The notes under the pieces are model-generated. The model did not search any database and was not told where the DNA came from. It saw only the letters and a program-made list of their open reading frames with translations. Positions 12,323 through 40,683 of a stretch of 64,000 nt of DNA are shown one piece after another; the first letter of the stretch is position 1, and the number at the start of each line of letters is the position of its first letter. This DNA comes from Macrostomum lignano (taxonomy: Eukaryota): contig NIVC01000461.1 in assembly GCA_002269645.1 (NCBI GenBank), positions 310,001 through 374,000 on the forward strand, in the 5' to 3' direction. The translations under genes and the position numbers were made by a program.

Positions 12323-12867
12323 CTTCCGCAGCAATATTTCTTTCATTAAATCAGGTTTCAAGATTTCAGAGTGCACAAATATTCGTCGAGCTTCTAGAAG
12401 TCTACACAATTCTTATATGTAAATTCCAGAAATCCTGATTTAAGTATGTTTGCACCATTGTCGCAACTGTTCTGATCTGTGCAAATAAACGAATTTCTTA
12501 ATGTTTCTTTTCTTGGAACAATTTTCTTGGTTCATTATAAGCATGGCAAACAGTTTTTTTTAAGTTGTTGTCTGGCTCTAACTGCCAATCTTTTTCACGA
12601 AAACAAATTTATTGGAGTTGTAATCGAATTATTTTGTATCATGAGTGTCCGAAGAGCGTTTATACGAGCTAAATATACTGTGCAAAATGAGTCTGAAATT
12701 TCTTTTAATACTAAGCAGTCTATCTATGTACATGCAAATGGGTAAGGTGCAGTTGTTGCAGTTGGATTTTAAACGATTTACGAGCGTACGAGCGTATTGT
12801 ACCTGCTACAGTATATTTTTGCTTCAGTATATATTTCTCATCTATTGATAATAGTAATAACAATAGT

Positions 12868-21082: not shown

Positions 21083-24000
21083 TCAGTCGAACGGGCTGAC
21101 GCACTGGCAGAGCGCGTAGTTATTCTCCGATTCGGCTTTGTCGTTGAACACAACGCCTGACTTCTCCAGCACCATGCGATTCTGGTTCACGTCGTTGTCG
21201 GGATCGTCCGAGTCCCACAGCGAGCTGCTCATGTTCACGGGCAGGCCGGAGCCCAGCCACAGCCAGCCCTGGTCCGGCTCCACGCTGCCAGGCGGCTGGA
21301 AGGCGTTCAGCCAGGCGTGATCGGACCACGGATAGCCGCCCATGGTGGCAGCGTGGTCCATGTCCTGGCGGTCCACCAGCTCAGCCAGGCGGGACAGGCC
21401 TCCGAGCGACTTGCAGTGGGTCTGCATGGGAAAGTTGGCAACTTTTATTTGTTTATTTACTTTGGAGTCTGACTAAGAATTTATCACGAGACTCTTGATG
21501 CCAGGACTTATTACTATACTCAACAACATTAAAAAGTCACCACCTGTGAGAGTGCGCAGTAAATTCCAGCTCAGTACTGACTTATGAGTGACGCAACTTG
21601 CGCCACGCGACGCAGAGTTGGGCTGGGTGAGGAGGATTGGAAAGAGTGGAGTGCGAAGATTGGATGGATTGAAGCTTCCGCTCGGTTTTCATTGTTTTTT
21701 CAAGCATGTTTTAATATCAAAATGGTTGACCAGGTGATAGACACTGGTCGAAAGACACTGCTCACTGGGGCAAAGGGTGGCGACTGTTCAATGTTGCTGA
21801 GTATAATTACCTGTTTCTGCTCAACTGCACCATTGCAAATATTAGCTAACCTTAAACATCCATTTCTGCCACATGGAGCTGGCACCAGACAGATGCTAAA
21901 CGACTACCTGATCTGCCAACCATGAGTGATCCCATTGGGACGTACAGTTTGATATCAAATGTCAGCTGCTCGGGAAGTTAGTCAGCTGGAAATGATAAAC
22001 ATGTTTTAGATGACAACTCAAGGACGACTTAGGTATAACTACCTGCAGCTTTATAATTGACTCAGTGTTTGTTTTGCCAACGTTTCAATCTGAATCAGCT
22101 GAATCAATCGTTTCTTGAACCGATACTCGTAAAGCAATTTGATAACAAAGCCTTTATGGCATTCGCATAGTTATATTTTCCAGAAATTTACAAGCTACAA
22201 GATACTCTCTAGGATGTACTTTTGCAGAAATTCTATCTGCCAACAGGAGCCCCAGCAAGGCATACACTGCCCTATTTTGGTTATGAGCGCATTGAAGAAC
22301 TCACAAGAGGACTGATATGGTTTAGCTCAACTTAATAGAAGCATTATCCGACTAGCTAAAATTTCTGTCTGTTGATTTCAATGGTTAGCTGAGCTGTCAG
22401 GAGCAGAAGTACAGAGCATTCAAGAGCAAGATATTGTATTTTCTTTCTTCATAGCTGCTCTTCAGCTTGATCTTAACCTTGGCTGAGAATACGAGGTATT
22501 TCCTATTTGGTGAAAAATTGCCCCCCCCCTGTTAAGAGGCTGAGCAGCCCAGTTCAGGATGGAGACAAATGAGCTTTATTTAGTCAAAGCTCAGTAGTAA
22601 ACGCATTTGACACGGTCTTTGGTTCGATTCTGTGCTCAAACACATTCACATTGCCTTGGGCTTGTGTGCACGAAAATTGTGCACTCAGGGGGTTGTCTGC
22701 GACTCACAGCCATGAGGGCCAGCCCCAAGGCACAGGGACTGTACATGCCTGACGATTAGAAAGTCAGGGCCGATGTACACCCTGTGTGAGCGTGTGTTTG
22801 AGTGCTCAGGAGTCAGCGGAATGTACAGAATTGCCGTCAGCTCTGGTTGTGGGACCGATGCCGCCGAAGTCGTAGCGCCAGGGATGCCCCACAGCCCCTC
22901 CTACAAATATGATTATGATTTTATTATTATCTAGAATTTACACATCGACGCAGAGACAAACTTCACAAGCTTGAAAGTTACCAAAATTTTTCGTTTTTCG
23001 ACGATGTCAAGTTTTGAGCTTATGAACTTTCGAGCTTGTGAAACGCCCTCACCCAGGTAGTACTCTATGAAGAGGCACGGCGCCTCAGCAGATGAACTGC
23101 GCCACTGCCTTGGAAAGCCTTGCAACCAGAGCACTGAGATCAGTGAGACAACTGCAGCCAGAGCACTGAGATCAGTGAGACAACTGCAACCAGAGCACTG
23201 AGATCAGTGAGACAACTGCAGCCAGAGCACTGAGATCAGTGAGACAACTGCAGCCAGAGCACTGAGATCAGTGAGACAACTGCAGCCAGAGCACTGAGAT
23301 CAGTGAGACAACTGCAGCCAGAGCACTGAGATCAGTGAGATAACTGCAGCCAGAGCACTGAGATCAGTGAGACAACTGCAACCAGAGCACTGAGATCAGT
23401 GAGACAACTGCAACCAGAGCACTGAGATCAGTGAGACAACTGCAGCCAGAGCACTGAGATCAGTGAGATAACTGCAGCCAGAGCACTGAGATCAGTGAGA
23501 CAACTGCAACCAGAGCACTGAGATCAGTGAGACAACTGCAGCCAGAGCACTGAGATCAGTGAGACAACTGCAACCATCCTATTAAAATCAATCGCTTCTG
23601 AACTAGCAGCAGCAATTAGTAAAGATGCTACTATAGTTAGTTTTCACATTTGTTCACACTCACGCTGGCCTGCTCCCAGGTGAAGCTGGTCTTCTCCAGC
23701 TTGAACTTCGTGCCGAACAAGTCGAAGCCGAAGCCCGAGCCGCACAGAGCGCCCGGCTGCGCCGCGCCGGCCACGTTGCGGACGAAGACGTCGGCCGTCC
23801 GATTCGGACACGGCATCACCGACCGGACGCGCCGGCTGAACGCGCCAAAGTTGAATCGGCGACAGCGAGCCGGAGCAGTCAGGATGGCGAAGGCCACGCA
23901 GCTGGGCAACTTGGCGCACGCGAACGAGCAGGACTTCGGATCGCTGACGCCTGACAGGTCGGGCATCGTGAAGCGAGGATCGATGCAGTCGAGCACCTGC

Positions 24001-24104
24001 GTGCTCACGCGGGTGAAGGTCGCCTTCTCCGAGCAGCCGGTCGATAAGTCGGCGGCAGCCTGGGAGATGCAGAGAAGCAGCTGGGCGAGAAGGACGGCGC
24101 GCAT
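21083..24104 (-). CDS. Secreted PAN/Apple + C-type lectin protein, copy A, 259 aa; exons 24104-23664 and 21421-21083
   Basis: Signal peptide MRAVLLAQLLLCISQAAA. Apple-like C-x3-C-x5-C-x2-F...C. CTLD features FTWEQAS|THCKSLGG..LAEL, WLN, WLWLGSG, WDSDDPDN, FND, LCQC. Phase-0 GT-AG intron. Confidence 0.85.
22699..22930 (+). mobile_element. Retroposon-like 3' fragment ending in an (ATT)-rich tail, in the lectin A intron
   Basis: Shared GCGACTCAC..CCATGAGGGCC..CCCAAGGCACAG..GTACATGCCTGACGATTAGAAAGTCAG..GTGTGAGCGTGTG with 32749-32980, 47504-47700 and, more weakly, ~37130-37230. Confidence 0.6.
23126..23576. repeat. 32-bp minisatellite (CCAGAGCACTGAGATCAGTGAGACAACTGCAG), ~14 copies
   Basis: Direct tandem repeats; only ~3 copies in block B (33198-33298). 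Confidence 0.95.
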
Positions 24105-24477
24105 GCTGGAGTGGCAGGCTGGAGCAGCGGCAGAGGCTTGGGCGGCAACCGGAGGCTGGCGAGGACCGGCGCTTTAAGCTGAAAACGCGGAATAGGAGGG
24201 GGAGAGAAGGGAGGGTAGGGCAGCGGAGAGTAAACTAGATTGGCTGCCCTCAGTTGAGCAACAAGCAGAGCAGTGCCAGCAGCCATTTCAACAAGTGGTC
24301 GCTATGGGTAACAAAAAACAAATTGCTGCGTCTGGTAACCCTCCCCCGCGCCGGCTTGTCTCTAGCTATACATCTACAATATCTAACTGCCCATCTCAAC
24401 ACCTCTGTTAATTGGCGTGCGCTTAGAATAGCCCAGTGAGACTTCTCTCTCTTTAAACGGTTTTTGGTTTGACACAT

Positions 24478-24943
<466 letters not shown>

Positions 24944-25880
24944 TAGATAGCGAGAAAGAGCGAGCGAAGCGAGCTCTTTCGAGCTTGCTTGCCGCAGCCA
25001 ATCAAGCTGAAAGCACGCACACAAGATCACCGGAAACGATTAAGGCAGCTGGAAAGCCAATGGGCGCGGTAAGCGCTTTTATCCAGAGGAACTACCTGCT
25101 GGAACCAGCCTGCCGTTCGAAAATCAGACTACTCAAGTAGTGCAAAAGAGTGCGAGCAACTACCGAGAAATCTAATTTTCGTAACCGCTCCGGTGCAGGT
25201 CCTGGCAATAGATGGTAGATAGCGAGAAAGAGCGAGCGAAGCGAGCTCTTTCGAGCTTGCTTGCCGCAGCCAATCAAGCTGAAAGCACGCACACAAGATC
25301 ACCGGAAACGATTAAGGCAGCTGGAAAGCCAATGGGCGCGGTAAGCGCTTTTATCCAGAGGAACTACCTGCTGGAACCAGCCTGCCGTTCGAAAATCAGA
25401 CTACTCAAGTAGTGCAAAAGAGTGCGAGCAACTACCGAGAAATCTAATTTTCGTAACCGCTCCGGTGCAGGTCCTGGCAATAGATGGTAGATAGCGAGAA
25501 AGAGCGAGCGAAGCGAGCTCTTTCGAGCTTGCTTGCCGCAGCCAATCAAGCTGAAAGCACGCACACAAGATCACCGGAAACGATTAAGGCAGCTGGAAAG
25601 CCAATGGGCGCGGTAAGCGCTTTTATCCAGAGGAACTACCTGCTGGAACCAGCCTGCCGTTCGAAAATCAGACTACTCAAGTAGTGCAAAAGAGTGCGAG
25701 CAACTACCGAGAAATCTAATTTTCGTAACCGCTCCGGTGCAGGTCCTGGCAATAGATGGTAGATAGCGAGAAAGAGCGAGCGAAGCGAGCTCTTTCGAGC
25801 TTGCTTGCCGCAGCCAATCAAGCTGAAAGCACGCACACAAGATCACCGGAAACGATTAAGGCAGCTGGAAAGCCAATGGG
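24944..25880. repeat. 272-bp tandem repeat, 3 full copies + 121-bp partial, embedded in (GATA)n
   Basis: Unit starts at 24944, 25216, 25488 and 25760; identical ORFs recur at 272-nt offsets. Confidence 0.96.
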
Positions 25881-26593
25881 TAGATAGATAGATAGATAGA
25901 TAGATATTCTGAAGGTGTGTCCCAACACTTACTGTGTTGTCTGTGTGTAAGATTAGGAATTCATCCTACCGTGTATCCTGATTCATGTCCAAATGATTTG
26001 AGAAAAGTTTTATTACTGCGGGGTAGCTCTTGAAGGTCGTACTTTAAATTTTCTTCCATTTGTTGCCACACGATAGGTTCAAATCAAATTATGCTGCTAC
26101 TCCCTGCTTAAGCTCTATGGTTACCATGGAGACATACAACTCCCTTTCTAGTTCTTCATAATTCAGATAGGAATCGCCATTGTAAGCAGTGGCACCTCTG
26201 TATGTAGTCTCTCCATGTGGATTCCTGAATAGGATTCTTGGCTGCGCCAAGGAGACCTAGCATGAGAACTTGGAGTAGCCACAGTACATCACTTTCAATA
26301 ACTTTTACACATCAAATCTAGTGAAGTGGAATCAATTACTTTTACTGTATTTAACTTCAATGTCGTTAACTTAAAAAAAGTATAATAATTTGGTTACTGT
26401 ATGCAGGGCTAGTAAAGGATTTTTGCATTCCAGAGTATCGCTCAAAGTCGCCTTGACTGCATACATAATTCATGCCTAATTAACGACGCCTGCGAAGCCA
26501 GCCACTCAAGCGGTGCGCCTTCATTCAGTGTCTGGGAGAGGAGACGATGAAGTCGTTGAGAGAGCCTGGAAGACTGCCTCTCCTGGGTGGGAA

Positions 26594-27040
26594 CACAGAT
26601 ACTAGAATGACTAGATGGGCCACTCAGGCACATATACTTAGTAAAATAGCTTTCTACTTTCAGTTCAGTAGCAAAGAGGAATACATAAGCTTTTTTATGA
26701 AAAAAGGCAGCTGAAATGACTTTGATAAGTTTAGAAGCCCAAGCTTGCAGGCGTAAACAACTTGCTAATTGGTTCAGCAATAATGTACATTAGCCAGTCT
26801 ACTAAAATGTACATGGCATCTTTAGGCTGGAATTCCAAAAAAGGCAATAAAATTGGGGTGGGGCGTGGCGGGGGTAGTGTGGAAGGCGCGGTTGGAGGGT
26901 TTAGGCTGGGGGTAAGAGCCAATAAATGAGCTTTCGCTTTGAAAATACATTAAAATGCTTCTGTTTAACTTGCTACTGAACTGAAAGTAGTTTGCACACA
27001 AATGTGCTGAGTGGCCCATCTAGCTATTCTAGTATCTGTG
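26594..27040 (-). mobile_element. MITE copy 2 (447 bp; CACAGATACTAG...CTAGTATCTGTG)
   Basis: ~35-bp TIRs plus inner inverted CTACTTTCAGTTCAGTAGCAA / TTGCTACTGAACTGAAAGTAG; flanks GGTGGGAA / GGTGGGAC (7/8). Confidence 0.88.
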
Positions 27041-27065
27041 GGTGGGACCTGCAGGTAAGAAATGG

Positions 27066-27874
27066 TATATATTCCCCATTTATACCAGTGCTAGGGCAAT
27101 AAATGCTTGAGTGACTTGTTTATTGACCGAGGCGAAGCCGAGGTCACTAAGCAAGGCACGAATGCATTTTTGCCCTAGACACTTGGTATTAATGGAGAAT
27201 ATTATATGTATCCCTCAGTTAAATAGCATATAGTACAAAGCTAAAAGCAAAAATGGCCATAGACACTAGCATCAAGGTACTGTACCGCTAAATGAAAGAC
27301 GCGCTCGTAAAAAGAAGAGAGACAGCGCGAGTGCTTAGCTTAGCTAGCTAGTTAAAATGGCTACCGAAAGATTTGTCAATCTGACTGACGAAGAAGTAAT
27401 GAGCGCTATATCTCGCCATCTATCACGAAGCATAAAACCGTAAGCGCAATTCTATGCGGTCAAGTCGACAGTCAAACTCGTGAGATCAGTACAAGGACCA
27501 TATCAACTGTGACTACACCCGATGGCAGTACTGCTACAACCGAGACGGACTTCTGTGAAACTACTGTGGTTCAAGGAACACCGCACAAACTAATGCGGAT
27601 TGAGGCTTGTGGTGACACTAATAAGGTGACCATCACATTCGAAAACAAGGACTAATCACTGTTATCTGCGTCATGTCTGCGTCTGCGTATATCACTGGAA
27701 CTTAGACTATTGCACAAGTGCAATTGTTAAATGGTTACAATTTCATGTTGAATCGATTTCATTTTAAAATATAAAGTTCTCGTTTATTTGCACTCTGTGC
27801 CGGTGCAAATAAATCATTTAATAAATAAACCATTAGAACATAGACTACTGCATCAGTGCAACTGGGGGATACAT
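27066..27874 (+). mobile_element. Possible non-autonomous Crypton-like element: 140-bp palindrome + segment bounded by 15-bp inverted repeats with decayed coding remnants
   Basis: Palindrome 27066-27206 centred on GCGAAGC; inverted repeats ATGTATCCCTCAGTT (27206-27220) / AACTGGGGGATACAT (27860-27874); short ORF MATERFVNLTDEEV at 27357. Family assignment is from remembered motifs only. Confidence 0.4.
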
Positions 27875-28633
27875 GCCTGTTGGCTGCTGACTAACGCTCC
27901 TTTCATTCGTTGATTTTTATAAAAAACCTACACTCACATCAATCCAACCGTGACTACTGATTTAGTTCACAGATACGAGAGAGAAATGTTAAACTGTAAA
28001 AGCAGAATAGATTACCTGATCATGAAATAATTTACTCAGGCGCGTCGCCACCGGGGGGGGGGACAGGGGGAAATGCTCCCCCAGTAAATGCTATGGGGGA
28101 CATGCCAATGCTTTGTCCCCCACCCCACCTTGTGACCCGTTGTGGTAATCAATAATTTTTCTTCAGGGCGCCAACAATATAGCGCCTTCGGCGCAAAATG
28201 AGTGCCTGCGGCGCCAAAAGGAATGCCTGAGGCGCCAAAATGAGTGCCTGCGGCGCCAAAATGAATACTGGCACTGAAATACTGGCACTGAAATACTGGC
28301 ACTGAAATACTGGCACTGAAATAGTGGCACTGAAATACTGGCACTGAAATAGTGGCACTGAAATACTGGCACTGAAATAGTGGCACTGAAATACTGGCAC
28401 TGAAATAGTGGCACTGAAATAGTGGCACTGAAATAGTGGCACTGAAATAGTGGCACTGAAATAGTGGCACTGAAATACTGGCACTGAAATTCTGGAACTG
28501 AAATACTGGCACTGAAATAGTGGCACTGAAATACTGGCACTGAAAAATTGGCACTGAAATAGTGGCACTGAAATAGTGGCACTGAAATAGTGGCACTGAA
28601 ATAGTTCCATCCTCCGCCGCTTCCTACCCACAG

Positions 28634-28798
28634 ATCACCCGATTAAAGATCGATCACAATCCCTTCGCAAGGGGATTCCGCAGCGATCCAACAACATCAG
28701 GCTCAGGGTAAGAATTATTAATCTCGTCTCATTAAAGGTTACTTGAATTTTCTTCAAGATGCAAATCGATTTAGGTTAATTTTAGGTCCTCAGTCTGA
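28634..28798 (+). pseudogene. Orphan duplicate of T-box exons 4-5 (28634-28707, 28786-28798)
   Basis: [24 protein letters not shown] exon identical to 18426-18499 with intact splice sites; no copies of exons 1-3 upstream in block B; intron 61 bp shorter. Confidence 0.8.
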
Positions 28799-29528
28799 AG
28801 AAATGCTTGGCTGTTTTGTAACAACTCTTTCAGAGAGAATAATGCAGAGCGTGCCAGCAGTGAGAGCCGCATGGTTGCCAGGCAAAAATTCGAACTCTCG
28901 GGAAGGTCGGCCGGGTTCACCATCGATCAGCTGCTGCGATCTGGCTGACCCAGTTGAACTCACTACTAGCATTGTTTGAACACTGATGACGCCAAAACAT
29001 TTTTTATAACCCCGAAACCTCACCAATGCGACTGTGACCTGTCAAGTCTTGAACCCTCATTCACGCCATGTGGTCTCACAGCAAATGCTTTTCCAAATTG
29101 GCTTGCCGGCCAAAGCACTGATAAAACGGGCCAAAACGCCCACCCGCCTTAACAAGTAGAGGTAATTTTATTATCTTGGAATGCAACAAACTTAATAGAA
29201 ATTATTCCAATATCGAAGGCTTCTGAATGTGTATGCATGAAGGACCGGGGGTGCATTGGCGGCCAATCTCAAAGGTGAGTGATTGAGTGTCCTAGTCTTA
29301 TTTATCTTTGTTGCTAATTTCACACTCTCCAAAACTGGCCCCGGAGTGTGAAATGTGTGGTTGAGGCTAAGCCACTCTTATCGCCACCTCTTATAAAGCG
29401 AACAGGCTTTTTTAAATTTAACTTTGCCAATTAAAAATTAGATTATAAATGCTAGTAGCTGTGCGCAACTCTATAGTGATTGTTTATACTCTGGAAAGGG
29501 GACGCTCTCACCTCACATGAGCTTTCAT

Positions 29529-30205
29529 GTGACCTGGCAATGGGTAGCTCATCTCTTTTCATAGCATGAGCTGCAGTGTTCTCAGTGACCCGGCAAGGGG
29601 TAGCTCATCTCTTTTCATAGCATGAGCTGCAGTGTTCTCAGTGACCCGGCAAGGGGTAGCTCATCTCTCTTCATAGCATGAGCTGCAGTGTTCTCAGTGA
29701 CCCGGCAAGGGTTAGCTCATCTCTCTTCATAGCATGAGCTGCAGTGTTCTCAGTGACCTGGCAAGGGGTAGCTCATCTCTCTTCATAGCATGAGCTGCAG
29801 TGTTCTCAGTGACCCGGCAAGGGGTAGCTCATCTCTCTTCATAACATGAGCTGCAGTGTTCTCAGTGACCCGGCAAGGGGTAGCTCATCTCTCTTCATAG
29901 CATGAGCTGCAGTGTTCTCAGTGACCCGGCAAGGGTTAGCTCATCTCTCTTCATAGCATGAGCTGCAGTGTTCTCAGTGACCTGGCAAGGGGTAGCTCAT
30001 CTCTCTTCATAGCATGAGCTGCAGTGTTCTCAGTGACCCGGCAAGGGTTAGCTCATCTCTCTTCATAGCATGAGCTGCAGTGTTCTCAGTGACCTGGCAA
30101 GGGGTAGCTCATCTCTCTTCATAGCATGAGCTGCAGTGTTCTCAGTGACCTGGCAAGGGGTAGCTCATCTCTCTTCATAACATGAGCTGCAGTGTTCTCA
30201 GTGAC
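29529..30205. repeat. 56-bp minisatellite, ~12 copies (block B)
   Basis: Same unit as 19381-20168. Confidence 0.95.
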
Positions 30206-31125
30206 TATATGCAAATAAACTTATTTTAATTCTTCTATTTTAACACTAAGACAGAGTTATGAAACGTAAGAATTTGTTTTAAATTTTGCCATCATGGAGA
30301 AGTTTATTGAGTACTTTTTGGGGGGGCTTGATGTAGTACCGTTGTGTCGGTCCGGAGAAATTGGATTGGTACATCTAGGAAAGTGGATAAATTAGTTTCG
30401 AAAAATGGAGAAATCAGACAATAAAATGTAAATTATCTTTTTAAATTTACGTCAACCAAAAAACAAAAAAATAGAATCCGAAACTGATCAGACAATAAAT
30501 TCCTTGTCAAAAATAGGTGGAGTTGCACAGAGTCTTCTGGAGAAGGCCAATGACTGGGATAGTACCACGATAAAACTCTAGTCACCATATTAAACATCAA
30601 TAATATAAAAAGCGTATTAAATTTCGGCGGGTGAGTAAGATGAGAAAAAAGCAACTAATAAGCTGAGATATGGTTGAATAACATAACAAAGTGAGGCAAT
30701 TTTCTGATAAGAATAAAGCATTCAAACAACCATTGGAGACAGTCGAAAGCAGAGAATTAATATAATTTTTAGAGAAATCATTTGTAAGAGATTCAATTTA
30801 GACTACTGAGAAAAGTAGACGAATAAAAATTTGAATCGTTAATCTCTCAAATAGCCTGAAAAATGTCGCCATAAAACAAATGGCTTTATGACTGACGAAG
30901 GCAAACAAATCAGAAACCGGGTCTGCTTGCAACCTCCAATTTTAGTGTATCACATAGTTCTTGAATTGCATCAGGCTTTTCAGAACATTAAAAACATCAG
31001 CTCTATAGTCTATATTTTAGTACATATGGACTAGATATTTAATTCAACCAAAATTCTCGATTCCCGAGTGCTCAATCATAATTATATTGGACCTCCATCG
31101 CCAACCAATCCATCCGTACCTTGTA

Positions 31126-33822
31126 TCAGTCGAACGGGCTGACGCACTGGCAGAGCGCGTAGTTATTCTCCGATTCGGCTTTGTCGTTGAACACAACGCC
31201 TGACTTCTCCAGCACGATGCGATTCTGGTTCACGTCGTTGTCGGGATCGTCCGAGTCCCACAGCGAGCTGCTCATGTTCACGGGCAGGCCGGAGCCCAGC
31301 CACAGCCAGCCCTGGTCCGGCTCCACGCTGCCAGGCGGCTGGAAGGCGTTCAGCCAGGCGTGATCGGACCACGGATAGCCGCCCATGGTGGCAGCGTGGT
31401 CCATGTCCTGGCGGTCCACCAGCTCAGCCAGGCGGGACAGGCCTCCGAGCGACTTGCAGTGGGTCTGCATGGGAAAGTTGGCAACTTTTATTTGTTTATT
31501 TACTTTGGAGTCTGACTAAGAATTTATCACGAGACTCTTGATGCCAGGACTTATTACTCGTACTATACTCAACAACATTAAAAAGTCACCACCTGTGAGA
31601 GTGCGCAGTAAATTCCAGCTCAGTACTGACTTATGAGTGACGCAACTTGCGCCACGCGACGCAGAGTTGGGCTGGGTGAGGAGGATTGGAAAGAGTGGAG
31701 TGCGAAGATTGGATGGATTGAAGCTTCCGCTCGGTTTTCATTGTTTTTTCAAGCATGTTTTAATATCAAAATGGTTGACCAAGTGATAGACACTGGTCGA
31801 AAGACACTGCTCACTGGGGCAAAGGGTGGCGACTGTTCAATGTTGCTGAGTATAATTACCTGTTTCTGCTCAACTGCACCATTGCAAATATTAGCTAACC
31901 TTAAACATCCATTTCTGCCACATGGAGCTGGCACCAGACAGATGCTAAACGACTACCTGATCTGCCAACCATGAGTGATCCCATTGGGACGTACAGTTTG
32001 ATATCAAATGTCAGCTGCTCGGGAAGTTAGTCAGCTGGAAATGATAAACATGTTTTAGATGACAACTCAAGGACGACTTAGGTATAACTACCTGCAGCTT
32101 TATAATTGACTCAGTGTTTGTTTTGCCAACGTTTCAATCTGAATCAGCTGAATCAATCGTTTCTTGAACCGATACTCGTAAAGCAATTTGATAACAAAGC
32201 CTTTATGGCATTCGCATAGTTATATTTTCCAGAAATTTACAAGCTACAAGATACTCTCTAGGATGTACTTTTGCAGAAATTCTATCTGCCAACAGGAGCC
32301 CCAGCAAGGCATACACTGCCCTATTTTGGTTATGAGCGCATTGAAGAACTCACAAGAGGACTGATATGGTTTAGCTCAACTTAATAGAAGCATTATCCGA
32401 CTAGCTAAAATTTCTGTCTGTTGATTTCAATGGTTAGCTGAGCTGTCAGGAGCAGAAGTACAGAGCATTCAAGAGCAAGATATTGTATTTTCTTTCTTCA
32501 TAGCTGCTCTTCAGCTTGATCTTAACCTTGGCTGAGAATACGAGGTATTTCCTATTTGGTGAAAAATTGCCCCCCCCCCTGTTAAGAGGCTGAGCAGCCC
32601 AGTTCAGGATGGAGACAAATGAGCTTTATTTAGTCAAAGCTCAGTAGTAAACGCATTTGACACGGTCTTTGGTTCGATTCTGTGCTCAAACACATTCACA
32701 TTGCCTTGGGCTTGTGTGCACGAAAATTGTGCACTCAGGGGGTTGTCTGCGACTCACAGCCATGAGGGCCAGCCCCAAGGCACAGGGACTGTACATGCCT
32801 GACGATTAGAAAGTCAGGGCCGATGTACACCCTGTGTGAGCGTGTGCTTGAGTGCTCAGGAGTCAGCGGAATGTACAGAATTGCCGTCAGCTCTGGTTGT
32901 GGGACCGATGTCGCCGAAGGCGTTGCGCCAGGGATGCCCCACAGCCCCTCCTACAAATATGATTATGATTTTATTATTATCTAGAAATTACACATCGTCG
33001 CAGAGACAAACTTCACAAGCTTGAAAGTTACCAAAATTTTCTGTTTTTCGACGATGTCAAGTTTTGAGCTTATGAACTTTCGAGCTTGTGAAACGCCCTC
33101 ACCCAGGTAGTACTCTATGAAGAGGCACGGCGCCTCAGCAGATGAACTGCGCCACTGCCTTGGAAAGCCTTATACATGTAAATGTATTTGCGTGTCTGCA
33201 GCCAGAGCACTGAGATCAGTGAGACAACTGCAACCAGAGCACTGAGATCAGTGAGACAACTGCAATTAGAGCACTAAGATCAGTGAGACAACTGCAGCAA
33301 TCCTATTAAAATCATTCGTTCTGAACTAGCAGCAGCAATTAGTAAAGCTACTAGTTAGTTTTCACATTTGTTCACACTCACGCTGGCCTGCTCCCAGGTG
33401 AAGCTGGTCTTCTCCAGCTTGAACTTCGTGCCGAACAAGTCGAAGCCGAAGCCCGAGCCGCACAGAGCGCCCGGCTGCGCCGCGCCTCCCACGTTGCGGA
33501 CGAAGACGTCGGCCGTCCGATTCGGCCACGGCGTCACCGACCGGACGCGCCGGCTGAACGCGCCAAAGTTGAATCTGCGACAGCGAGCCGGAGCAGTCAG
33601 GATGGCGAAGGCCATGCAGGTGGGCAACTTGGCGCACGCGAACGAGCAGGACTTCGGATCGCTGACGCCTGACAGGTCGGGCATCGCAAAGCGAGGATCG
33701 ATGCAGTCGAGCACCTGCGTGCTCACGCGGGTGAAGGTTGCCTTCTCCGAGCAGCCGGTCGATAAGTCGGCGGCAGCCCGGGAGATGCAGAGAAGCAGCT
33801 GGGCGAGAAGGGCGGCGCGCAT
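31126..33822 (-). CDS. Secreted PAN/Apple + C-type lectin protein, copy B; exons 33822-33382 and 31464-31126
   Basis: Intact ORF and splice sites; 9 aa differences from copy A including Cys99Trp. Confidence 0.83.
32749..32980 (+). mobile_element. Retroposon-like 3' fragment (block B copy)
   Basis: Duplicate of 22699-22930. Confidence 0.6.
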
Positions 33823-34196
33823 GCTGGAGTGGCAGGCTGGGGCAGCGGCAGAGGCTTGGGCGGCAACCGGAGGCTGGCGAGGACCGGCGCATTTAAGCTG
33901 AAAACGCGAAATAGGAGGGGGAGAGAAGGGAGGGTAGGGCAGCGGAGAGTAAATAGATTGGCTGCCCTCAGTTGAGCAACTAGAAGAGCAGTGCCAGCAG
34001 CCATTTCAACAAGTGGTTGCTATGGGTAACAAAAAACAAATTGCTGCGTCTGGTATCCCTCCCCCGCGCCGGCTTGTCTCTAGCTATACATTTACAATAT
34101 CTAACTGCCCATGTCAGCACCTCTGTTAATTGGCGTGCACTTAGAATAGCCCAGTGAGACTTCTTTCTCTTTAAACAGTTTTTGGTTTGACATATT

Positions 34197-34529
34197 GAGA
34201 TAGATAGTGACATACCATAGATAGTGACATACCATGGATAGTGACATAGACAATGACATACCCTGGATAGTGACATACTACAGATGGTGACATACTATAT
34301 AGATAGTGACATACTACAGATACTGACATACTATAGATAGTGACATACTTTAGATAGTGACATACCATAGATAGTGACATACTATAGATAGTGACATACC
34401 ATAGATAGTGACATACTATAGATAGTGGCATACTTTAGATAGTGACATACCATAGATAGTGACATACTATAGATAGTGACATACCATAGCTGATAGGGCC
34501 ATAAATACTGACATAAATACTGACATACG

Positions 34530-34613
<84 letters not shown>

Positions 34614-34614
34614 G

Positions 34615-34648
<34 letters not shown>
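34197..34648. repeat. 17-bp minisatellite + (GATA)n (block B)
   Basis: Counterpart of 24478-24943. Confidence 0.92.
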
Positions 34649-35148
34649 CACACACGGAAATATTGAAGAACGTTAGTTGTCGAATATTCAGAAACCGATA
34701 TTTCGGCCTGGACTGGGCCTTCGTCAGGGTTTATTTATTCGGGTTTAAAAACAAATATATTGGCTGTGAAGTTATTTTAACATAATTTCAATATATATAT
34801 GCGACTTTTGGGGGTGCACTGAGCAGTGTTGAGTAAAGATGTGTACGTATAATTAGTTAAAAACGTGAGTTGAAGCACGCTGATTGGTTAAAGTCTTGCA
34901 GCTAAAGCCTTGCACAAAAATAAATATGTTAGGTGCTATAGAAAACCAGATTTAAAGCGTAGAAGTGTATGACTAAGCATCTAGAAAAGTTCAACAAATA
35001 AGTTAATTACGCCCGTAGAAAAAAACAAATATTAAATTAATACAGAGCACTGAGAACTTTGCATAAATAAGTGTAAATAATTAGATGTAACTATTGAATT
35101 CATATACAGTAATTAATTGGGTAGCCAGACAGGCCACGCGAGACGCAG
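34649..35148 (-). mobile_element. ~500-bp insert within (GATA)n carrying a hammerhead ribozyme; likely Penelope-like element end or retrozyme-like element
   Basis: Unique sequence bounded by GATA tracts on both sides and absent from block A; hammerhead near its minus-strand 3' end, followed by (TCTA)n. Confidence 0.6.
34681..34741 (-). ncRNA. Minimal type I hammerhead ribozyme
   Basis: Minus strand: CGAATA-aat-AAACC-CTGACGA-A-GGCC-cagtcca-GGCC-GAAA-TA-TC^GGTTT-ctgaa-TATTCG. Core boxes intact; helix II GGCC/GGCC; palindromic ATAT helix III; helix I AAACC/GGTTT extended by CGAATA/TATTCG. Confidence 0.82.
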
Positions 35149-35242
<94 letters not shown>

Positions 35243-35243
35243 T

Positions 35244-35308
<65 letters not shown>
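35149..35308. repeat. (GATA)n microsatellite
   Basis: Direct. Confidence 0.97.
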
Positions 35309-36279
35309 AGGTGTGTCCCAACACTTACTTAATCGCCTGTGTGTAAAATTAGGAATTCATCCTACCGTGTATCCTGATTCATGTCCAAATGATTTGAAAA
35401 AAGTTTTATTACTGCGGGGTAGCTCTTGAAGGTCGTACTTTAAATTTTCTTCCATTTGTTGCCACACGATAGGTTCAAATCAAATTATGCTGCTACCCCC
35501 TGCTTCAGCTCTATGGTTACCATGGAGACAGACAACTCCCTTTCTAGTTCTCCATCATTCAGATAGGAATCGCCATTGTAAGCAGTGGCACCTCTGTGTG
35601 TAGTCTCTCTATGTGGATTCCTGAATTGGATTCGTGGCTGCGCCAAGGAGACCTAGCATGAGAACTTGGAGTAGCCACAGTACATCACTTTCAATAACTT
35701 TTACACATCAAATCTAGTGAAGTGGAATAGGGAAGTGAAGTGAAGTCTAGTGAAGTGCAACGCGACTGTTGAGTCACGATTGTCACGGGAGTTGCAGAAT
35801 TGTAAAAAGTTGTCCAAGAGTCATTGTGTTAGCGCTTAAATTTCTACTTACTCAAGCAGACTAAATAGAGTTGTTATAAATGCGAACTGCGATTCTAATT
35901 CATAAAGTGATGCAACTCAGCGATTCTACAGCGACTCCAGCACGCCTCAGATGCGACTCTGCGGCCCCAGAGTCATTTTTGATTCACAGACAATAAAATA
36001 CCAAGTATCCTTGGTTAGATTCCATTCGGCGAAAATTTGGCTTTGGGAGGCGTTCTCCCTCACGCCCCATGGACCAGCCCGCGAAGCATGGGCACCTGAA
36101 GTGGAAGGATTTTTCAGAAATGAGCTGGAGGTTGGTAAGGAGTGTATATTTGTCGCATTGCTAGTGAGATGTCAAGGCTCAAGCAGGAGTTGCTGAGATG
36201 CTGCATTTAGTATGCGCTGAGTGGGGTTTCGCCATAGAAAATTTGATCGAGAAAAATCCGGTTCCTCTAGAGCATACTA

Positions 36280-37035
36280 TAGCTTTTTGCAGCTTATTTG
36301 GGCTTACGCGCATTTAATTTAATCCAAGATAGGTTTGCCAATGTAATGGAGCTTTTGTCTATGGTAGCAAGGCTGGCACAGCGGCATTTGATTTAGTCCA
36401 ACAAGCATCAATTTGGTCCAAATGCTTGTGAGCCAATGGCAAACTCTTGCCTTCTCGCAACCGCCTAAGGATTGTTGCGCACCGCTGGAATGTCAGCGTC
36501 TGTACCAGCAATTTCAGTCGCTTTTCCAGAGCTCTGCTGATAGTCAAAATCTGATAACCAACTGGAACTGTTTCTTCAACTGCTGCTGCATTTTCTGCTC
36601 CGTCAACAAAGGGTTCGTCTCAATTGCATTAAGTAGCAGTTAGACCTGAGTCTCTAGCAACTTGCCTTGGCGATTGCCACCTTTCACAGGCGACCTATGC
36701 CAGAATTGGTTTCAACACGCTGATGGATGCTGTAAATCATCTTTCTTCTATATTCAGCAACCTTGCAATGTCCTCTGGGTGTTCACCTCTGTTGAGTGCT
36801 TTGATCACAAGCCAGTGGCATTCGTTCGACAACCTAGCATGGTCCACAACTCTGGGGCTGATCTTGCTCCTCCGCAACAGTTGCAAATAAAGCTATGGAC
36901 CAAATTGATGCTTGTTGGACTAAATTAAGTGCCGCTGTGCCAGCCTTGCTACCATAGACAAAGCTCTGTTACATTGGCAAACCTATCTTGGATTAAATTA
37001 AATGCGCGTAAGCCCAAATGGGCTGCAAAAAGCTA
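36280..37035 (-). mobile_element. Decayed, internally deleted Tc1/IS630-like DNA transposon with ~140-bp TIRs and TA TSD
   Basis: Inverted repeats 36280-36420 / 36896-37035 flanked by TA. Frameshifted minus-strand translation LVIKALNRGEHPEDIARLLNIEER..MIYSIHQRVETN..GGNRQGKL..IETNPLLT..LTISRAL resembles a bipartite HTH DNA-binding domain. Confidence 0.65.
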
Positions 37036-38093
37036 TACTAAAAGATGCACTGCGATGCGGCAAATATTCTTTCCTTACTGGCCTCCGGCTCATTTCTAGG
37101 AAAATCGAGTGTAGTGCCCTTCCACTTCAGTTGTGCATGTCCCAAGGCATAGTTTGTACATGTCTAATGATCAGAAAGTCGGAACCGCTGTAAACTTAGT
37201 GTGAGCGTGTGCCTGCGTACGTACCCGTGCTCCAGGGTCAGTGGAATGGCTACGGTTCGACTGTCGCCTTGACTTGTTTCAGCGCCCAGAGCCCACTGCG
37301 AACTACAAGTAACTAACAAACTAAGGTCAACAAGTGTCACTCCCATGTTTAGGCTTCTCCCATGCAAAGATACGCTCATATCGGAACGAAAGTTTGGACA
37401 AAATTGAAAAGACACAGGGCGTGCCTCAAGGCGTTGACGTTGACGAAGCGCCTGGTTCGCGCCTGTCCTCTGTAGGTCGTCTGCAGTATCAGCATCAACA
37501 CCTCCTGTGCAACATTTTTGTCAACAAAAATTTCCTTGGATCGTCTCCAAGCTTTAAAACCTAACAAGCCAAGCTCCAGGTCGTCAATGGGACTGAGTTT
37601 TGTCTAGGCCCTCCCGTCCTTCAGCCACTTCTCTGTGTAGCTCGTAGTAACTTCGCCAATTCTACTTTCTAATTGCTCAAACTGACAAGATTTACTTCAA
37701 GCAACTCGAAGCGCAAATGCATTAGACTGAAAGAGAAAAGTTGTTTTTCAAATTTAAAATCGGTCAGAAAGAAACTGGGGACATATACCAGAGCTGACTT
37801 TCCTGAACATATAGTTCGTAAAATGGGTAAAAAAATTTATGCCAGCCTTACATCATCATTGCGTCAGACATCCGTACATCAGATTTTGGCTCTTCCCGAC
37901 GAGCTTAACACCATCAAACCCGCTGGCTGACCTGCAGCCATCTGCCATCCGGTGAATGCCCGCAGTCGCAGCTGTCTGTGGCCAGCACCAGCGGCACCCT
38001 GCCACTAACTCTGAGAAAACCCACTGTGGCTGCAGAGCAGCCATCAAAGAAACAACACCCATTTTTACACAGCTCATAGCTCATTAGTGAATC

Positions 38094-38290: not shown

Positions 38291-38766
38291 GAAGTGTTTG
38301 AAGCAGAGAGTATCGTCAATTTTACAGCTAATTACAGTATAGTTTTACTATAACAAATGCATTTCTTTGAATTTTGTCCCTGAATAACTCGCTCTCGTTA
38401 TAGTCACCGTCTCTACAACAGGATTTGAAGATTTGAAAATTAACCGCACTGATTCCAGTGAAGTGTTTTAGCAGTACTCAAAGAGGGCCGAGGGTTACAA
38501 GGGTTTCCCTCATGAGAAAAAAGAGTAAAAGACAATGGCGAGGCGACGGAGCTGATGCATCATACATTTTCTTTCCTTTCCATGGAAACAATTGTTCTCA
38601 AACTGCAAACCCTTCACGCTGCCTGACAGCCAATCCATCAACTGACTCCTCCCTTCCACTCCTCCTTCGTCTCTCCTTTTGAATTTTTCAGCTTAAATGC
38701 GCCGGTCCTCGCCAGCCTCCGGTTGCCGCCCAAGCCTCTGCCGCTGCCCCAGCCTGCCACTCCAGC

Positions 38767-40045
38767 ATGCGCGCCGCCCTTCTCGCCCAGCTGCTTCTCT
38801 GCATCTCCCAGGCTGCCGCCGACTTATCGACCGGCTGCTCGGAGAAGGTGACCTTCACCCGCGTGAGCACGCAGGTGCTCGACTGCATCGATCCTCGCTT
38901 TGCGATGCCCGACCTGTCAGGCGTCAGCGATCCGAAGTCCTGCTTCTATGCGTGCGCCAGTTTGCCCAGCTGCGTGGCCTTCGCCATCCTGACTGCTCCG
39001 GCTCGCTGTCGCCGATTCAACTTTGGCGCGTTCAGCCGGCGCGTCCGGTCGGTGATGCCGTGTCCGAATCGGACGGCCGACGTCTTCGTCCGCAACGTGG
39101 GCGGCGCGGCGCAGCCGGGCGCTCTGTGCGGCTCGGGCTTCGGCTTCGACTTGTTCGGCACGAAGTTCAAGCTGGAGAAGACCAGCTTCACCTGGGAGCA
39201 GGCCAACGTGAGTGCTTTGTTTCTCAAGCTACACACTGGATAGGCTGGCAGAGTGAAATATCATTATGTACTTAAATTACAATCTAAATCCAACCGCTTC
39301 CTCACAAAAAGCGGGAGTTTCACTGGTGATGTTAGTGGCTAACGTTCTCTCTCCTCTGTTCTGTTCTTTCATTAAAAGAGCGACTGTAACTTTAGGAGAA
39401 AATTCAATCATATCTCTAGACAAGGGTTAATGCCTTAACACTTGATTGTTAAAGTTGCAGGTAATTGTAATTAAGTCGCCCTTGAGTTATGTCAGCCCAA
39501 AAACATGATTGTTATTTCCTCCTGACTAACTTCCGAGCAGCTGACATTCGATTTCAAACTGTATGTCTACAATGGTAGATCCGGTAGTGGTTCCGCATCT
39601 TGTTGGTGCCGGCTCTGTTTCAGAAACAAGTGTTCAAGATTAGCTAATATTTGCAATAGTAAAGCTGAACTTTAGACTTGTAATTAGTAATAACTTTCCC
39701 ATGCAGACCCATTGCGAGTCGCTCGGAGGTCTGTCCCGCCTGGCTGAGCTGGTGGACCGCCAGGACATGGACCACGCTGCCACCATGGGCGGCTATCCGT
39801 GGTCCGATCAGGCCTGGCTGAACGCCTTCCAGCCGCCTGGCAGCGTGGAGCCGGACCAGGGCTGGCTGTGGCTGGGCTCCGGCCTTCCCGTGAACATGAG
39901 CAGCTCGCTGTGGGACTCGGACGATCCCGACAACGACGTGAACCAGAATCGCATGGTGCTGGAGAAGTCAGGCGTTGTGTTCAACGACAAAGCCGAATCG
40001 GAGAATAACTACGCGCTCTGCCAGTGCGTCAGCCCGTTCGACTGA
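38767..40045 (+). CDS. Secreted PAN/Apple + C-type lectin protein, copy C (inverted), 259 aa; exons 38767-39207 and 39707-40045
   Basis: Same two-exon structure: donor CAAC|gtgagt, acceptor atgcag|ACC; 499-bp intron. Confidence 0.87.
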
Positions 40046-40208
40046 TACAAGGTACGTCGAACGGTTTTATCAGAGGCCACCACAGACTGAAGGTAAACCG
40101 TGACCACCTCGGAACACTCTGAGCTCACGCTGAGCTGCAACTAAAACTGAACTACAATTCTCTGTGACACGTCCATAAATGGCTAGAGCAAGACAAGCTA
40201 ATCATAAC

Positions 40209-40683
40209 CACAGATACTAAAATAACTAGATGGCCACTCAGGCACATATACTTAGTAAAACAGCTTTCTACTTTCAGTTCAGTAGCAAAGAAGAATACAT
40301 AAGCTATTTTATAAAAATAAAGGCAGCTGAAATGACTTTGATAAGTTTAGAAGCCCAAGCTTGCAGGCGTAAACAACTTGCTAATTGGTTCAGCAATAAT
40401 GTACATTAGCCAGTCCACTGAAATGTACACGGCAATTTTAGGCTGGAATTCCAAGAAAGGCAATAAAAATTGGGGCTGTGCGGGGGGGGGGGTAAGTGTG
40501 AAAAGGCGCGGTTGGAGGGTTTAAGCTGGGGGGGGGTAGAGCCAATAAATGAGTTGGCTTTAAAAATATTGTACATTTAAATGCTTCTGTTTAACTTGCT
40601 AACTTGTTTAGCTTGCGTGAAAGTAGCTTACACGCAAATGTGCTCTGAGTTTGCAATCCCATCTAGTTATTCTAGTATCTGTG
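40209..40683 (-). mobile_element. MITE copy 3
   Basis: Same TIRs and interior as 26594-27040; flanks ATCATAAC / ATCATGAC (7/8). Confidence 0.87.

What the first reader, a model, noticed from the sequence alone, without database searches (positions are those of the whole stretch)
34681..34741. Intact minimal type I hammerhead ribozyme hidden between two GATA tracts
Seen (minus strand): CUGACGA and GAAA cores; 4-bp helix II with a 7-nt loop; palindromic 4-nt helix III (AUAU); AUC cleavage triplet (cut after 34697); 5-bp helix I extended by a further 6 bp across an internal loop. One extra A lies between A9 and G10.1. Known: minimal type I hammerheads with palindromic helix III occur in Penelope-like elements and retrozymes and can cleave as dimers; an A9/G10.1 insertion is tolerated in natural hammerheads; loop I-loop II contacts enhance activity. 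Inference: a self-cleaving RNA marking a small retroelement.
Basis: partly seen in the sequence, partly recalled or inferred. Interest (0 to 1): 0.82.

Follow-up and report, generated by a model that had tools for sequence, protein, structure and literature searches.

The report
Penelope-type minimal hammerhead in a GATA-tract insert
The hammerhead ribozyme motif is really there and is very unlikely to be chance, but it is an ordinary minimal hammerhead of the kind Penelope-like retroelements scatter through animal genomes, here in a lone 500-bp insert in a flatworm GATA microsatellite, with cleavage untested.

Summary
That covers both core boxes, the extra A after A9, the G10.1-C11.1 pair, the palindromic AUAU helix III, C17 at 34697, a 5-bp helix I and a 6-bp closing stem.

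A minimal-hammerhead descriptor finds this one site and none in 1500 shuffled windows. Three of its features were not demanded by a core search. They are the hallmarks published for minimal hammerheads of metazoan Penelope-like elements (PLEs), flatworms included.

The motif lies 48 nt from the 3' end of a 500-bp, 35% G+C block (34649-35148). That block interrupts one (GATA)n microsatellite in phase. The window is from a Macrostomum flatworm.

Weak points:
- No second copy could be found, so there is no covariation.
- No RT or GIY-YIG coding sequence lies within the 64 kb.
- No Rfam hammerhead model matches.
- In longer context the hammerhead fold is not the minimum-energy fold.
- A lone monomer has no partner for the dimer its helix III needs.

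Verdict: a new member of a known kind, probably a truncated or non-autonomous PLE-type copy that is inert at this locus. Interest is low to moderate. The paralogous GATA tract carries a different, highly structured 272-bp tandem insert, which is the odder observation.

The parts
34649..35148 (-). 500-bp, 34.8% G+C block that interrupts a (GATA)n microsatellite. Proposed insert: a truncated or non-autonomous PLE-type element, or a solo pLTR.
   Evidence: Unique in the window. Removing it rejoins ...GATAGATAGA|TAGATAGATA... in phase. The paralogous copy of the locus lacks it. No terminal inverted repeats, no tRNA-like part, no ORF longer than 40 aa. The whole-insert fold is not unusual, z = +0.78.
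34681..34741 (-). Complete type I minimal hammerhead motif, including the closing stem of helix I.
34721..34727 (-). Core box CUGACGA (C3-A9).
34720..34720 (-). Extra unpaired A between A9 and G10.1.
   Evidence: A hallmark of PLE minimal hammerheads according to PMC4209133.
34705..34719 (-). Helix II hairpin GGCC-CAGUCCA-GGCC, closed by G10.1-C11.1.
34697..34704 (-). GAA (G12-A14), palindromic AUAU (15.1, 15.2, 16.2, 16.1) and C17. The predicted cut is between 34697 and 34696.
   Evidence: As a monomer helix III is 1 bp plus a 2-nt loop. As a dimer it is 4 A-U pairs.
34728..34732 (-). Helix I, 5' strand AAACC, pairing with 34696-34692 GGUUU.
34692..34696 (-). Helix I, 3' strand GGUUU.
34733..34741 (-). 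Loop 1 5' side (AAU) and closing stem CGAAUA.
34681..34691 (-). Loop 1 3' side (CUGAA) and closing stem UAUUCG.
34649..34696 (-). 48-nt stretch between the predicted cut site and the 3' end of the insert.
   Evidence: The geometry resembles PLEs, where the hammerhead lies near the 3' end and reverse transcription starts a short distance downstream of it (PMC8557442; PMC11167929).
34530..34648 (.). (GATA)n tract on the low-coordinate side, downstream of the insert in its own orientation.
35149..35308 (.). (GATA)n tract on the high-coordinate side, upstream of the insert in its own orientation.

Best explanation
The motif is a genuine retroelement-borne minimal type I hammerhead, of the class carried in the terminal repeats (pLTRs) of Penelope-like elements and their non-autonomous derivatives. 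It lies near the 3' end of a 500-bp copy that was inserted into a (GATA)n microsatellite of a Macrostomum flatworm genome. The copy is either 5'-truncated, a solo pLTR, or non-autonomous.

Inferred mechanism in the parent element:
1. Tandem or multimeric transcripts bring two hammerheads together.
2. Their palindromic AUAU stretches pair to form a 4-bp shared helix III (a double hammerhead). This may be helped by the element's protein.
3. Each core cuts 3' of C17, leaving a 2',3'-cyclic phosphate and a 5'-OH, which trims the RNA to unit length.
4. The element's RT and GIY-YIG nuclease then nick AT-rich or microsatellite DNA and start reverse transcription a few tens of nucleotides downstream of the ribozyme. 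This would explain why the insert ends 48 nt after the cut site.

At this locus the copy is a lone monomer with no partner in 64 kb, so it is most likely a catalytically idle relic.

Shown: the motif, its improbability by chance, the discrete in-phase interruption of the microsatellite, and the flatworm origin. Inferred: the PLE parentage, the dimer mechanism, any cleavage, and how the insert got there.
For: - All core positions and helices I and II are present. They are the minimum-energy fold of the isolated 61-71 nt.
- The minimal-hammerhead descriptor gives 1 hit in the window and 0 in 1500 shuffles.
- Three features that a core search does not demand are present: an extra nucleotide after A9, G10.1-C11.1, and a palindromic 15.2/16.2. 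These are exactly what PMC4209133 lists as arguing against chance for PLE minimal hammerheads. [quoted passage not shown]
- The window is from Macrostomum. The best protein hit is an M. lignano C-type lectin at 66% identity. The window also shares interspersed repeats at 80-90% identity with an M. lignano contig.
- The 500-bp block splits a GATA tract in phase and is absent from the paralogous copy of the locus.
- PLEs are documented to favour microsatellite or AT-rich targets and to carry the hammerhead near the 3' end (PMC8557442; PMC11167929).
- An unrelated metagenome contig, L008, links this core to a PLE. It has the same core in the same register: CUGACGA-U-GGCC..GGCC-GAAAUAUC. It lies 79 nt downstream of the stop of an ORF carrying the PLE-type GIY-YIG signature GVYRIPCGDCAQCYIGET...EH, with two Cys inside the GIY-YIG core.
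Against: - No second copy of the insert was found in the window, in an M. lignano contig, through six-frame protein searches or in the pattern scans. There is therefore no covariation or consensus.
- No RT (YxDD) or GIY-YIG coding remnant lies in the 64 kb.
- No Rfam hammerhead model matches, even on 81 nt at E <= 10.
- In 161-500 nt context the minimum-energy fold is a competing hairpin, AGGCCGA/UCGGUUU, and the hammerhead helices have probabilities of 0.03-0.16.
- The shared helix III would be only four A-U pairs.
- Helix II is 4 bp, not the 7-8 bp typical of S. mansoni PLE minimal hammerheads.
- No target-site duplication can be read in a microsatellite.
Confidence: 0.7

Rival explanations
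1. It is a real hammerhead-bearing non-autonomous element, but not PLE-derived or PLE-mobilised. It could be a monomeric non-LTR retrozyme or a Sm-alpha-like SINE, copied by a microsatellite-specific LINE-type machinery or through microhomology priming on the GATA tract.
For: - No PLE coding sequence lies in the window.
- The helix I and II dimensions (5-6 bp with an internal loop and closing stem; 4 bp with a 7-nt loop) resemble canonical metazoan type I hammerheads of retrozymes as much as they resemble PLE minimal hammerheads.
- Reported retrozyme consensus lengths run from 51 to 972 bp, and monomer copies are common.
- The paralogous GATA tract received a different, tandem insert whose 3' end shares microhomology (CUAUCUAC) with the repeat.
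- From general knowledge, not tested here: microsatellite-specific non-LTR elements are known.
Against: - It is a single copy, not a tandem array.
- The 500-nt RNA is not highly self-paired, z = +0.78, unlike retrozyme circular RNAs.
- No tRNA-like 5' part.
- Recent work places animal retrozymes as PLE pLTR derivatives anyway, so this rival largely merges with the main reading.
Confidence: 0.2
2. It is a chance match to the hammerhead consensus in AT-rich unique DNA between two microsatellite tracts, with no ribozyme ancestry.
For: - No Rfam hit.
- The fold z-score is only -1.85.
- The hammerhead fold is not favoured in context.
- A lenient descriptor expects 0.08 hits per window.
- No other copy was found.
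Against: - 0 hits in 1500 shuffles with the minimal-hammerhead descriptor, and an analytic estimate of about 5e-5 per window.
- The extra nucleotide, G10.1-C11.1, the palindromic 15.2/16.2 and a 6-bp closing stem are all present together.
- The motif sits inside a discrete insertion-like block.
Confidence: 0.05
3. It is a host-domesticated ribozyme. The hammerhead lies about 875 nt upstream of the lectin ORF start at 33822, on the same strand, and would process or regulate that gene's transcript.
For: It has the same orientation as the PAN/C-type lectin exon at 33355-33822.
Against: - The two paralogous lectin copies in the window lack it.
- Monomeric minimal hammerheads show no detectable activity in vitro.
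- There is no evidence that the site is transcribed.
Confidence: 0.03

Closest known systems
Minimal type I hammerheads (min-HHRs) in the pLTRs of metazoan Penelope-like elements (Cervera & de la Pena 2014, PMC4209133), including the Cercyon PLEs of the flatworm Schistosoma mansoni
   Same: - Type I topology.
- No real helix III, only A15.1-U16.1 with a palindromic 15.2-16.2, so a dimer is needed.
- An unpaired nucleotide between A9 and G10.1.
- The G10.1-C11.1 pair.
- Helix I of 4-5 bp with loop 1 and a closing stem.
- Mostly found as solitary copies away from full elements.
- Position close to the 3' end of the insertion unit.
   Different: - Helix II is 4 bp with a 7-nt loop, not the 7-8 bp reported for S. 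mansoni.
- No PLE ORF or second pLTR lies within 64 kb.
- No family of copies could be examined.
- The target is a GATA microsatellite. The papers read here mention (TA)n, (CA)n, (C)n or AT-rich sites.
Canonical metazoan type I hammerheads of non-LTR retrozymes and satellite repeats (newt, axolotl, coral, mussel; PMC7229834)
   Same: - Helix I of about 6 bp and helix II of 4 bp.
- A very weak helix III (1-2 bp capped by a small palindromic loop) that works through dimers.
- A low-G+C host element of a few hundred bp.
   Different: - Those sit in tandem arrays of 150-450 bp units and give highly self-paired circular RNAs.
- Here there is one 500-bp copy with an unremarkable fold.
- Loop-loop contacts are unverified.
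Poseidon PLE of Anolis carolinensis (PAc; PMC11167929)
   Same: - The hammerhead lies a short distance upstream of the point where reverse transcription starts, which becomes the 3' end of new insertions.
- Target DNA is AT-rich.
- The ribozyme is weak.
   Different: - In PAc the hammerhead overlaps the start of the ORF, and the RT start is about 85-92 nt after the cut. Here the distance is 48 nt and no ORF is present.
- PAc cleavage needed the element's protein. Nothing is known here.
Metagenome contig L008 (Ga0182011_10240342): PLE-type GIY-YIG ORF followed by a minimal hammerhead
   Same: - Identical core register, CUGACGA-N-GGCC...GGCC-GAAAUAUC, with a zero-loop AUAU helix III and an extra nucleotide.
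   Different: - Helix II is 7 bp and helix I only 2 bp.
- There is no sequence similarity outside the core.
- It comes from an unrelated organism.

Membership tests
Hammerhead ribozyme (catalytic motif) | Conserved core: C3 U4 G5 A6 N7 G8 A9, G12 A13 A14, A15.1-U16.1, H17 not G | tested here: met
   CUGACGA at 34727-34721, GAA at 34704-34702, A15.1 at 34701, U16.1 at 34698, C17 at 34697.
Hammerhead ribozyme (catalytic motif) | Three helices around the core. Type I means helix I is open and helices II and III are closed. | tested here: inconclusive
   Helix I (5 bp plus a 6-bp closing stem) and helix II (4 bp) are present and form the minimum-energy fold of the isolated motif. Helix III exists only as 1 bp plus a 2-nt loop, or as 4 A-U pairs in a dimer. 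In 161-500 nt context the hammerhead fold is a minority.
Hammerhead ribozyme (catalytic motif) | Site-specific self-cleavage 3' of position 17 | not testable with these tools
   Needs in vitro transcription or mapping of RNA ends.
Rfam hammerhead models (Hammerhead_1 RF00163 and the other Rfam hammerhead families) | Covariance-model score at or above the gathering threshold | tested here: not met
   No hit at gathering on the window. No hit at E <= 10 on 451 nt or on 81 nt. The same library also reported nothing for twelve metagenome and genome loci (54,878 bases) that carry the same core, nor on a 141-nt stretch of locus L010 at E <= 10. I therefore had no positive control, and the negative carries little weight.
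Metazoan PLE minimal hammerhead (PMC4209133) | [quoted passage not shown] | tested here: met
   A at 34720. Criterion.
Metazoan PLE minimal hammerhead (PMC4209133) | Conserved G10.1-C11.1 pair | tested here: met
   G at 34719 pairs with C at 34705.
Metazoan PLE minimal hammerhead (PMC4209133) | Palindromic 15.2-16.2 (and loop 3 if present), allowing a dimeric helix III | tested here: met
   AUAU at 34701-34698.
Metazoan PLE minimal hammerhead (PMC4209133) | Belongs to a within-genome consensus family with covariation and compensatory changes | not testable with these tools
   The source genome is not in any searchable collection. No copy was found in the window, in L001, in the protein searches or in the pattern scans.
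Metazoan PLE minimal hammerhead (PMC4209133) | Located in the pLTR of an element encoding RT plus a GIY-YIG nuclease | tested here: not met
   No YxDD or GIY-YIG signature in any frame of the 64 kb. The source paper says most genomic copies are solitary, so this weakens the assignment but does not exclude it.
Non-LTR retrozyme (PMC7229834) | Tandem repeats of 150-450 bp, each carrying a type I hammerhead | tested here: not met
   One hammerhead in the window. The insert is a single 500-bp copy.
Non-LTR retrozyme (PMC7229834) | Highly self-paired unit RNA | tested here: not met
   The 500-nt insert has z = +0.78 against shuffles.
Sm-alpha-like SINE with hammerhead | tRNA-related, Pol III-promoter 5' part | tested here: not met
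   ARAGORN finds nothing in 24000-36000. No box A or B was seen by eye. This is a weak test.

The most novel reading that the evidence does not exclude
Macrostomum may host mobile RNAs that home specifically to (GATA)n microsatellites. The two paralogous copies of one GATA tract, 9.7 kb apart, were each hit independently. One received the hammerhead-bearing 500-bp element. The other received 3.4 identical copies of a 272-nt, very strongly folding unit that has no known ribozyme. That second insert would look like rolling-circle reverse transcription of a small circular RNA. If so, the hammerhead element would be one member of a site-specific, circle-based retroelement system, and the 272-nt unit might carry an undescribed processing motif.
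Probability: 0.12. Interest if true: 0.55.

Novelty: new member of a known kind. Interest (0 to 1): 0.25.

Why it matters
As it stands this adds one more minimal hammerhead to a class already counted in the thousands per genome in flatworms, fish, amphibians and many invertebrates. It would be an early record for a macrostomid flatworm: my one literature search combining Macrostomum and hammerhead returned nothing relevant.

Its practical value is as an annotation marker. It flags a 500-bp block in a lectin-gene upstream region as retroelement-derived, and it shows that Rfam-based annotation misses this variant.

The more useful lead is the targeting. Two different inserts sit in two paralogous GATA tracts. 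If that proves general in the genome, it would extend the known microsatellite preferences of PLE-type elements, (TA)n and (CA)n, to a tetranucleotide repeat.

Tried and rejected
- Rfam at gathering and at permissive thresholds, on the window, on 451 nt and on 81 nt: no hammerhead hit.
- Control scans of other loci carrying the same core also returned no hammerhead hit. Rfam could therefore neither confirm nor refute.
- Search for other copies of the insert, all empty:
  - self-BLAST of the window;
  - BLAST against the only M. lignano contig I could fetch;
  - exact look-up of the 40-aa ORF that overlaps the motif;
  - a six-frame pseudo-protein search of the whole insert.
- Pattern scans of metagenome, prokaryotic-genome and viral collections. 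These returned other hammerhead-like cores but no relative of this insert. The two viral hits lack helix II and are chance matches.
- Looked for RT or GIY-YIG remnants in all six frames: none.
- Looked for tRNA-like parts and terminal inverted repeats: none. A SINE of the tRNA type and a MITE are therefore not supported. A Helitron was rejected by eye from the termini.
- Supplements of the two key PLE papers are not held as text, so published minimal-hammerhead sequences could not be aligned.
- For the paralogous 272-bp tandem insert: the Rfam permissive scan, an exact ORF look-up and a four-frame pseudo-protein search over two tandem units were all empty.

Full report
**1. The observation**

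On the minus strand, 34741..34681 reads as follows:

CGAAUA-AAU-AAACC-CUGACGA-A-GGCC-CAGUCCA-GGCC-GAA-AUAU-C-GGUUU-CUGAA-UAUUCG

- both core boxes;
- one extra A (34720) between A9 and G10.1;
- a 4-bp helix II closed by G10.1-C11.1, with a 7-nt loop;
- the palindromic AUAU in place of helix III;
- C17 at 34697, so the cut would fall between 34697 and 34696;
- a 5-bp helix I, continued across a 3x5 internal loop by a 6-bp closing stem.

The isolated 61-71 nt fold into exactly this arrangement as the minimum-energy structure. The energy is not striking, with z = -1.85.

**2. Chance**

The answer depends on the descriptor.
- A deliberately lenient descriptor that accepts any helix III hairpin up to 70 nt expects 0.08 hits per shuffled window.
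- A descriptor modelled on the published minimal hammerhead finds the one real site and nothing in 1500 dinucleotide-preserving shuffles. It requires G10.1-C11.1, an optional extra nucleotide, a palindromic 15.2/16.2, helix I of at least 4 bp and helix II of at least 3 bp.
- My analytic estimate is about 5e-5 per 64-kb window, which is roughly one chance hit per gigabase.

I therefore treat the motif as non-random.

**3. Rfam**

No Rfam family reaches its gathering score anywhere in the window. No hammerhead model appears even at E <= 10 on 451 nt or on 81 nt.

This negative is weak. The same library reported nothing for twelve metagenome and genome loci (54,878 bases) carrying the same core. 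It also reported nothing on a 141-nt stretch of one of them, L010, at E <= 10.

**4. Context**

The window is eukaryotic and very rich in minisatellites.
- The ORF next to the motif (33355-33822, minus strand) is the first exon of a lectin-like gene. Its only database relative is a Macrostomum lignano C-type lectin domain protein at 66% identity.
- The window shares several interspersed repeats at 80-90% DNA identity with the M. lignano contig that encodes that protein.
- The source is therefore M. lignano or a close relative, a free-living flatworm.

The hammerhead lies in a 500-bp, 34.8% G+C block, 34649-35148. This block separates two (GATA)n tracts at 34530-34648 and 35149-35308. Deleting the block rejoins the tracts in phase...GATAGATAGA|TAGATAGATA....

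The locus is part of a tandem segmental duplication, with 19964-26332 matching 30000-35728 at 92-98% identity. The other copy has the same GATA tract, but there it is interrupted by something entirely different. The 500-bp block is therefore an insertion, or at least a lineage-specific acquisition, that post-dates the duplication.

In the hammerhead's orientation the cut site is 48 nt from the 3' end of the block.

The block itself has:
- no ORF above 40 aa;
- no terminal inverted repeats;
- no tRNA-like part;
- no unusual overall folding, z = +0.78.

**5. Comparison with the literature**

Cervera & de la Pena 2014 (PMC4209133) defined the minimal hammerheads of metazoan Penelope-like elements.
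- They are type I motifs with essentially no helix III, expected to act as dimers.
- About 2,000 copies were found in the flatworm Schistosoma mansoni and thousands in other animals.
- Most are solitary copies. A few lie in the pLTRs that flank an RT plus GIY-YIG ORF.

The authors list features that emerged although their search did not demand them:
- a conserved G10.1-C11.1 pair;
- palindromic 15.2-16.2;
- genome-wide families with covariation.

The present motif has the first three. The fourth could not be tested. The paper also reports helix I of 4-5 bp with a closing stem, which agrees with this motif. Helix II here is 4 bp, as in canonical metazoan type I hammerheads, and not the 7-8 bp reported for S. 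mansoni.

On activity, the same paper found none for monomers and low activity for dimers. Frangieh et al. 2024 (PMC11167929) found the following for an Anolis PLE:
- its hammerhead cleaved only in the presence of the element's protein;
- cleavage was not needed for insertion in vitro;
- reverse transcription starts internally, a short way downstream of the ribozyme;
- targets are AT-rich.

Craig et al. 2021 (PMC8557442) document a microsatellite insertion bias in PLEs, (TA)n and (CA)n, and place the hammerhead near the 3' end. A 2026 preprint argues that animal non-LTR retrozymes derive from PLE pLTRs.

**6. An independent link between this core and a PLE**

I scanned public collections for the pattern CTGANGA-N-GGCC-N(5-9)-GGCC-GAAATATC. 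It gave 20 metagenome contigs and 4 prokaryotic-genome contigs, most of the latter labelled as metagenome-assembled genomes. None is related to the insert outside the core.

- Contig L008 carries the core in the same register as here, with a zero-loop AUAU and an extra U. The core lies 79 nt downstream of the stop of an ORF containing GVYRIPCGDCAQCYIGET...LSEH. That is a GIY-YIG motif with two cysteines inside it, the signature of PLE endonucleases. The Pfam GIY-YIG match has E = 6e-4, below the curated cut-off.
- About ten hits, read by eye, come from one group of metagenomes, which I take from their sample names to be termite gut. They can be read as type I hammerheads with a 1-bp helix III capped by UAUC, followed by a 4-6 bp helix I.

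These hits show that the variant is used by PLE-type elements elsewhere. They say nothing about this particular copy.

**7. What could not be done**

The source genome is not in any collection open to these tools.
- I found no second copy of the insert in the window or in the M. lignano contig.
- An exact look-up of the overlapping 40-aa ORF found nothing.
- A six-frame pseudo-protein search of the insert found nothing.
- No RT or GIY-YIG remnant is present in any frame of the 64 kb.

There is therefore no covariation evidence and no direct proof that the block is a retroelement.

Two points also argue against activity at this locus.
- When the motif is folded within 161, 261 or 500 nt, a competing hairpin (AGGCCGA/UCGGUUU) wins, and the hammerhead helices have probabilities of 0.03-0.16.
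- There is no second hammerhead to dimerise with.

**8. Conclusion**

The best reading is a genuine PLE-type minimal hammerhead near the 3' end of a truncated or non-autonomous copy inserted into a GATA microsatellite, probably idle at this locus. My confidence is about 0.7.

Rival readings:
- The main rival is the same kind of element mobilised by other machinery, or a retrozyme monomer, at about 0.2.
- Chance, at about 0.05.
- A domesticated regulatory ribozyme, at about 0.03.

This is a new member of a known kind. The interest lies less in the ribozyme than in the targeting.

**9. Side observation: the paralogous GATA tract**

The paralogous GATA tract holds 3.4 head-to-tail copies, 100% identical, of a 272-bp unit of 52% G+C.
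- The minus-strand RNA of the unit folds to -102.8 kcal/mol, z = -4.6.
- No Rfam match and no protein-level relative was found.
- The array ends, in that orientation, at CUAUCUAC, which is microhomologous to the repeat.

Identical units in more-than-unit length are what rolling-circle reverse transcription of a small circular RNA would give. They are also what a recent local tandem duplication would give.

Noticed in passing
window 24943-25880 (unit e.g. 25337-25608): The paralogous GATA tract is interrupted by 3.4 head-to-tail, 100% identical copies of a 272-bp unit of 52% G+C. The minus-strand RNA of one unit folds to -102.8 kcal/mol (z = -4.6), and the plus strand gives z = -2.8. There is no hammerhead core, no Rfam hit at E <= 10 and no protein-level relative. 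The array's 3' end (minus orientation) is CUAUCUAC, microhomologous to the GATA repeat. It could be a rolling-circle cDNA of a small structured RNA or simply a young minisatellite.
   Followed up: partly
window 19964-26332 vs 30000-35728; also 38685-39214 and 39692-40056 (inverted): A tandem segmental duplication at 92-98% identity carries a two-exon lectin-like gene. The first-exon ORF looks PAN/apple-like to me (not domain-tested), and the nearest relative is named a C-type lectin domain protein. A third, inverted partial copy is present. The nearest database relative is an M. lignano protein at 66% identity.
   Followed up: partly
window 2135-3768, 11668-12438, 13953-15770, 16730-17935, 28036-28631, 51318-53009, 55861-57077, 59995-61053: There is an exceptional density of long minisatellite arrays, which show up as long repetitive pseudo-ORFs on both strands. 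They make up a large share of the window.
   Followed up: no
window 36274-37041: An element of about 770 bp has inverted terminal arms (36278-36427 vs 36890-37037, 94%). It is also present at 80% identity in the M. lignano contig L001 at 7702-8467. It looks like a foldback or MITE-like transposon.
   Followed up: no
window 10404-10856, 26594-27041, 40208-40683: Three copies of an interspersed repeat of about 450 bp are shared at 84-87% identity with M. lignano contig L001 at 4783-5231.
   Followed up: no
window 34200-34489 (and 24480-24820): A 17-bp minisatellite, (ATAGATAGTGACATACT)n, abuts the GATA tract and looks derived from it.
   Followed up: no
L008 560-1217 (minus strand): This 1.2-kb metagenome contig holds a PLE-type GIY-YIG endonuclease ORF (GVYRIPCGDCAQCYIGET...EH). 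It is followed 79 nt later by a minimal hammerhead with the same core register as the window's motif.
   Followed up: partly
L022 1855-1887 (+) and 5638-5670 (-): This 5.8-kb, 31% G+C contig is filed as a Chlamydiae metagenome-assembled genome. It carries two inverted copies of the same PLE-type minimal hammerhead as L008, next to a tRNA and an ORF with VWA and papain-like domains. The contig may be eukaryotic DNA binned by mistake.
   Followed up: partly
L003, L004, L005, L012, L013, L014, L015, L016, L019, L021: A set of contigs from one group of metagenomes, termite gut judging by their sample names, carries CUGAWGA-U-GGCC..GGCC-GAAA-UAUC-U-H followed by a 4-6 bp helix I. I read this as type I hammerheads with a 1-bp helix III and a UAUC loop. 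None is reported by Rfam at gathering.
   Followed up: partly
window 5072-5659 (minus strand): An exon-like ORF that looks coronin-like by eye (WD-repeat style sequence such as ...FRHVYGK...). No search was run.
   Followed up: no
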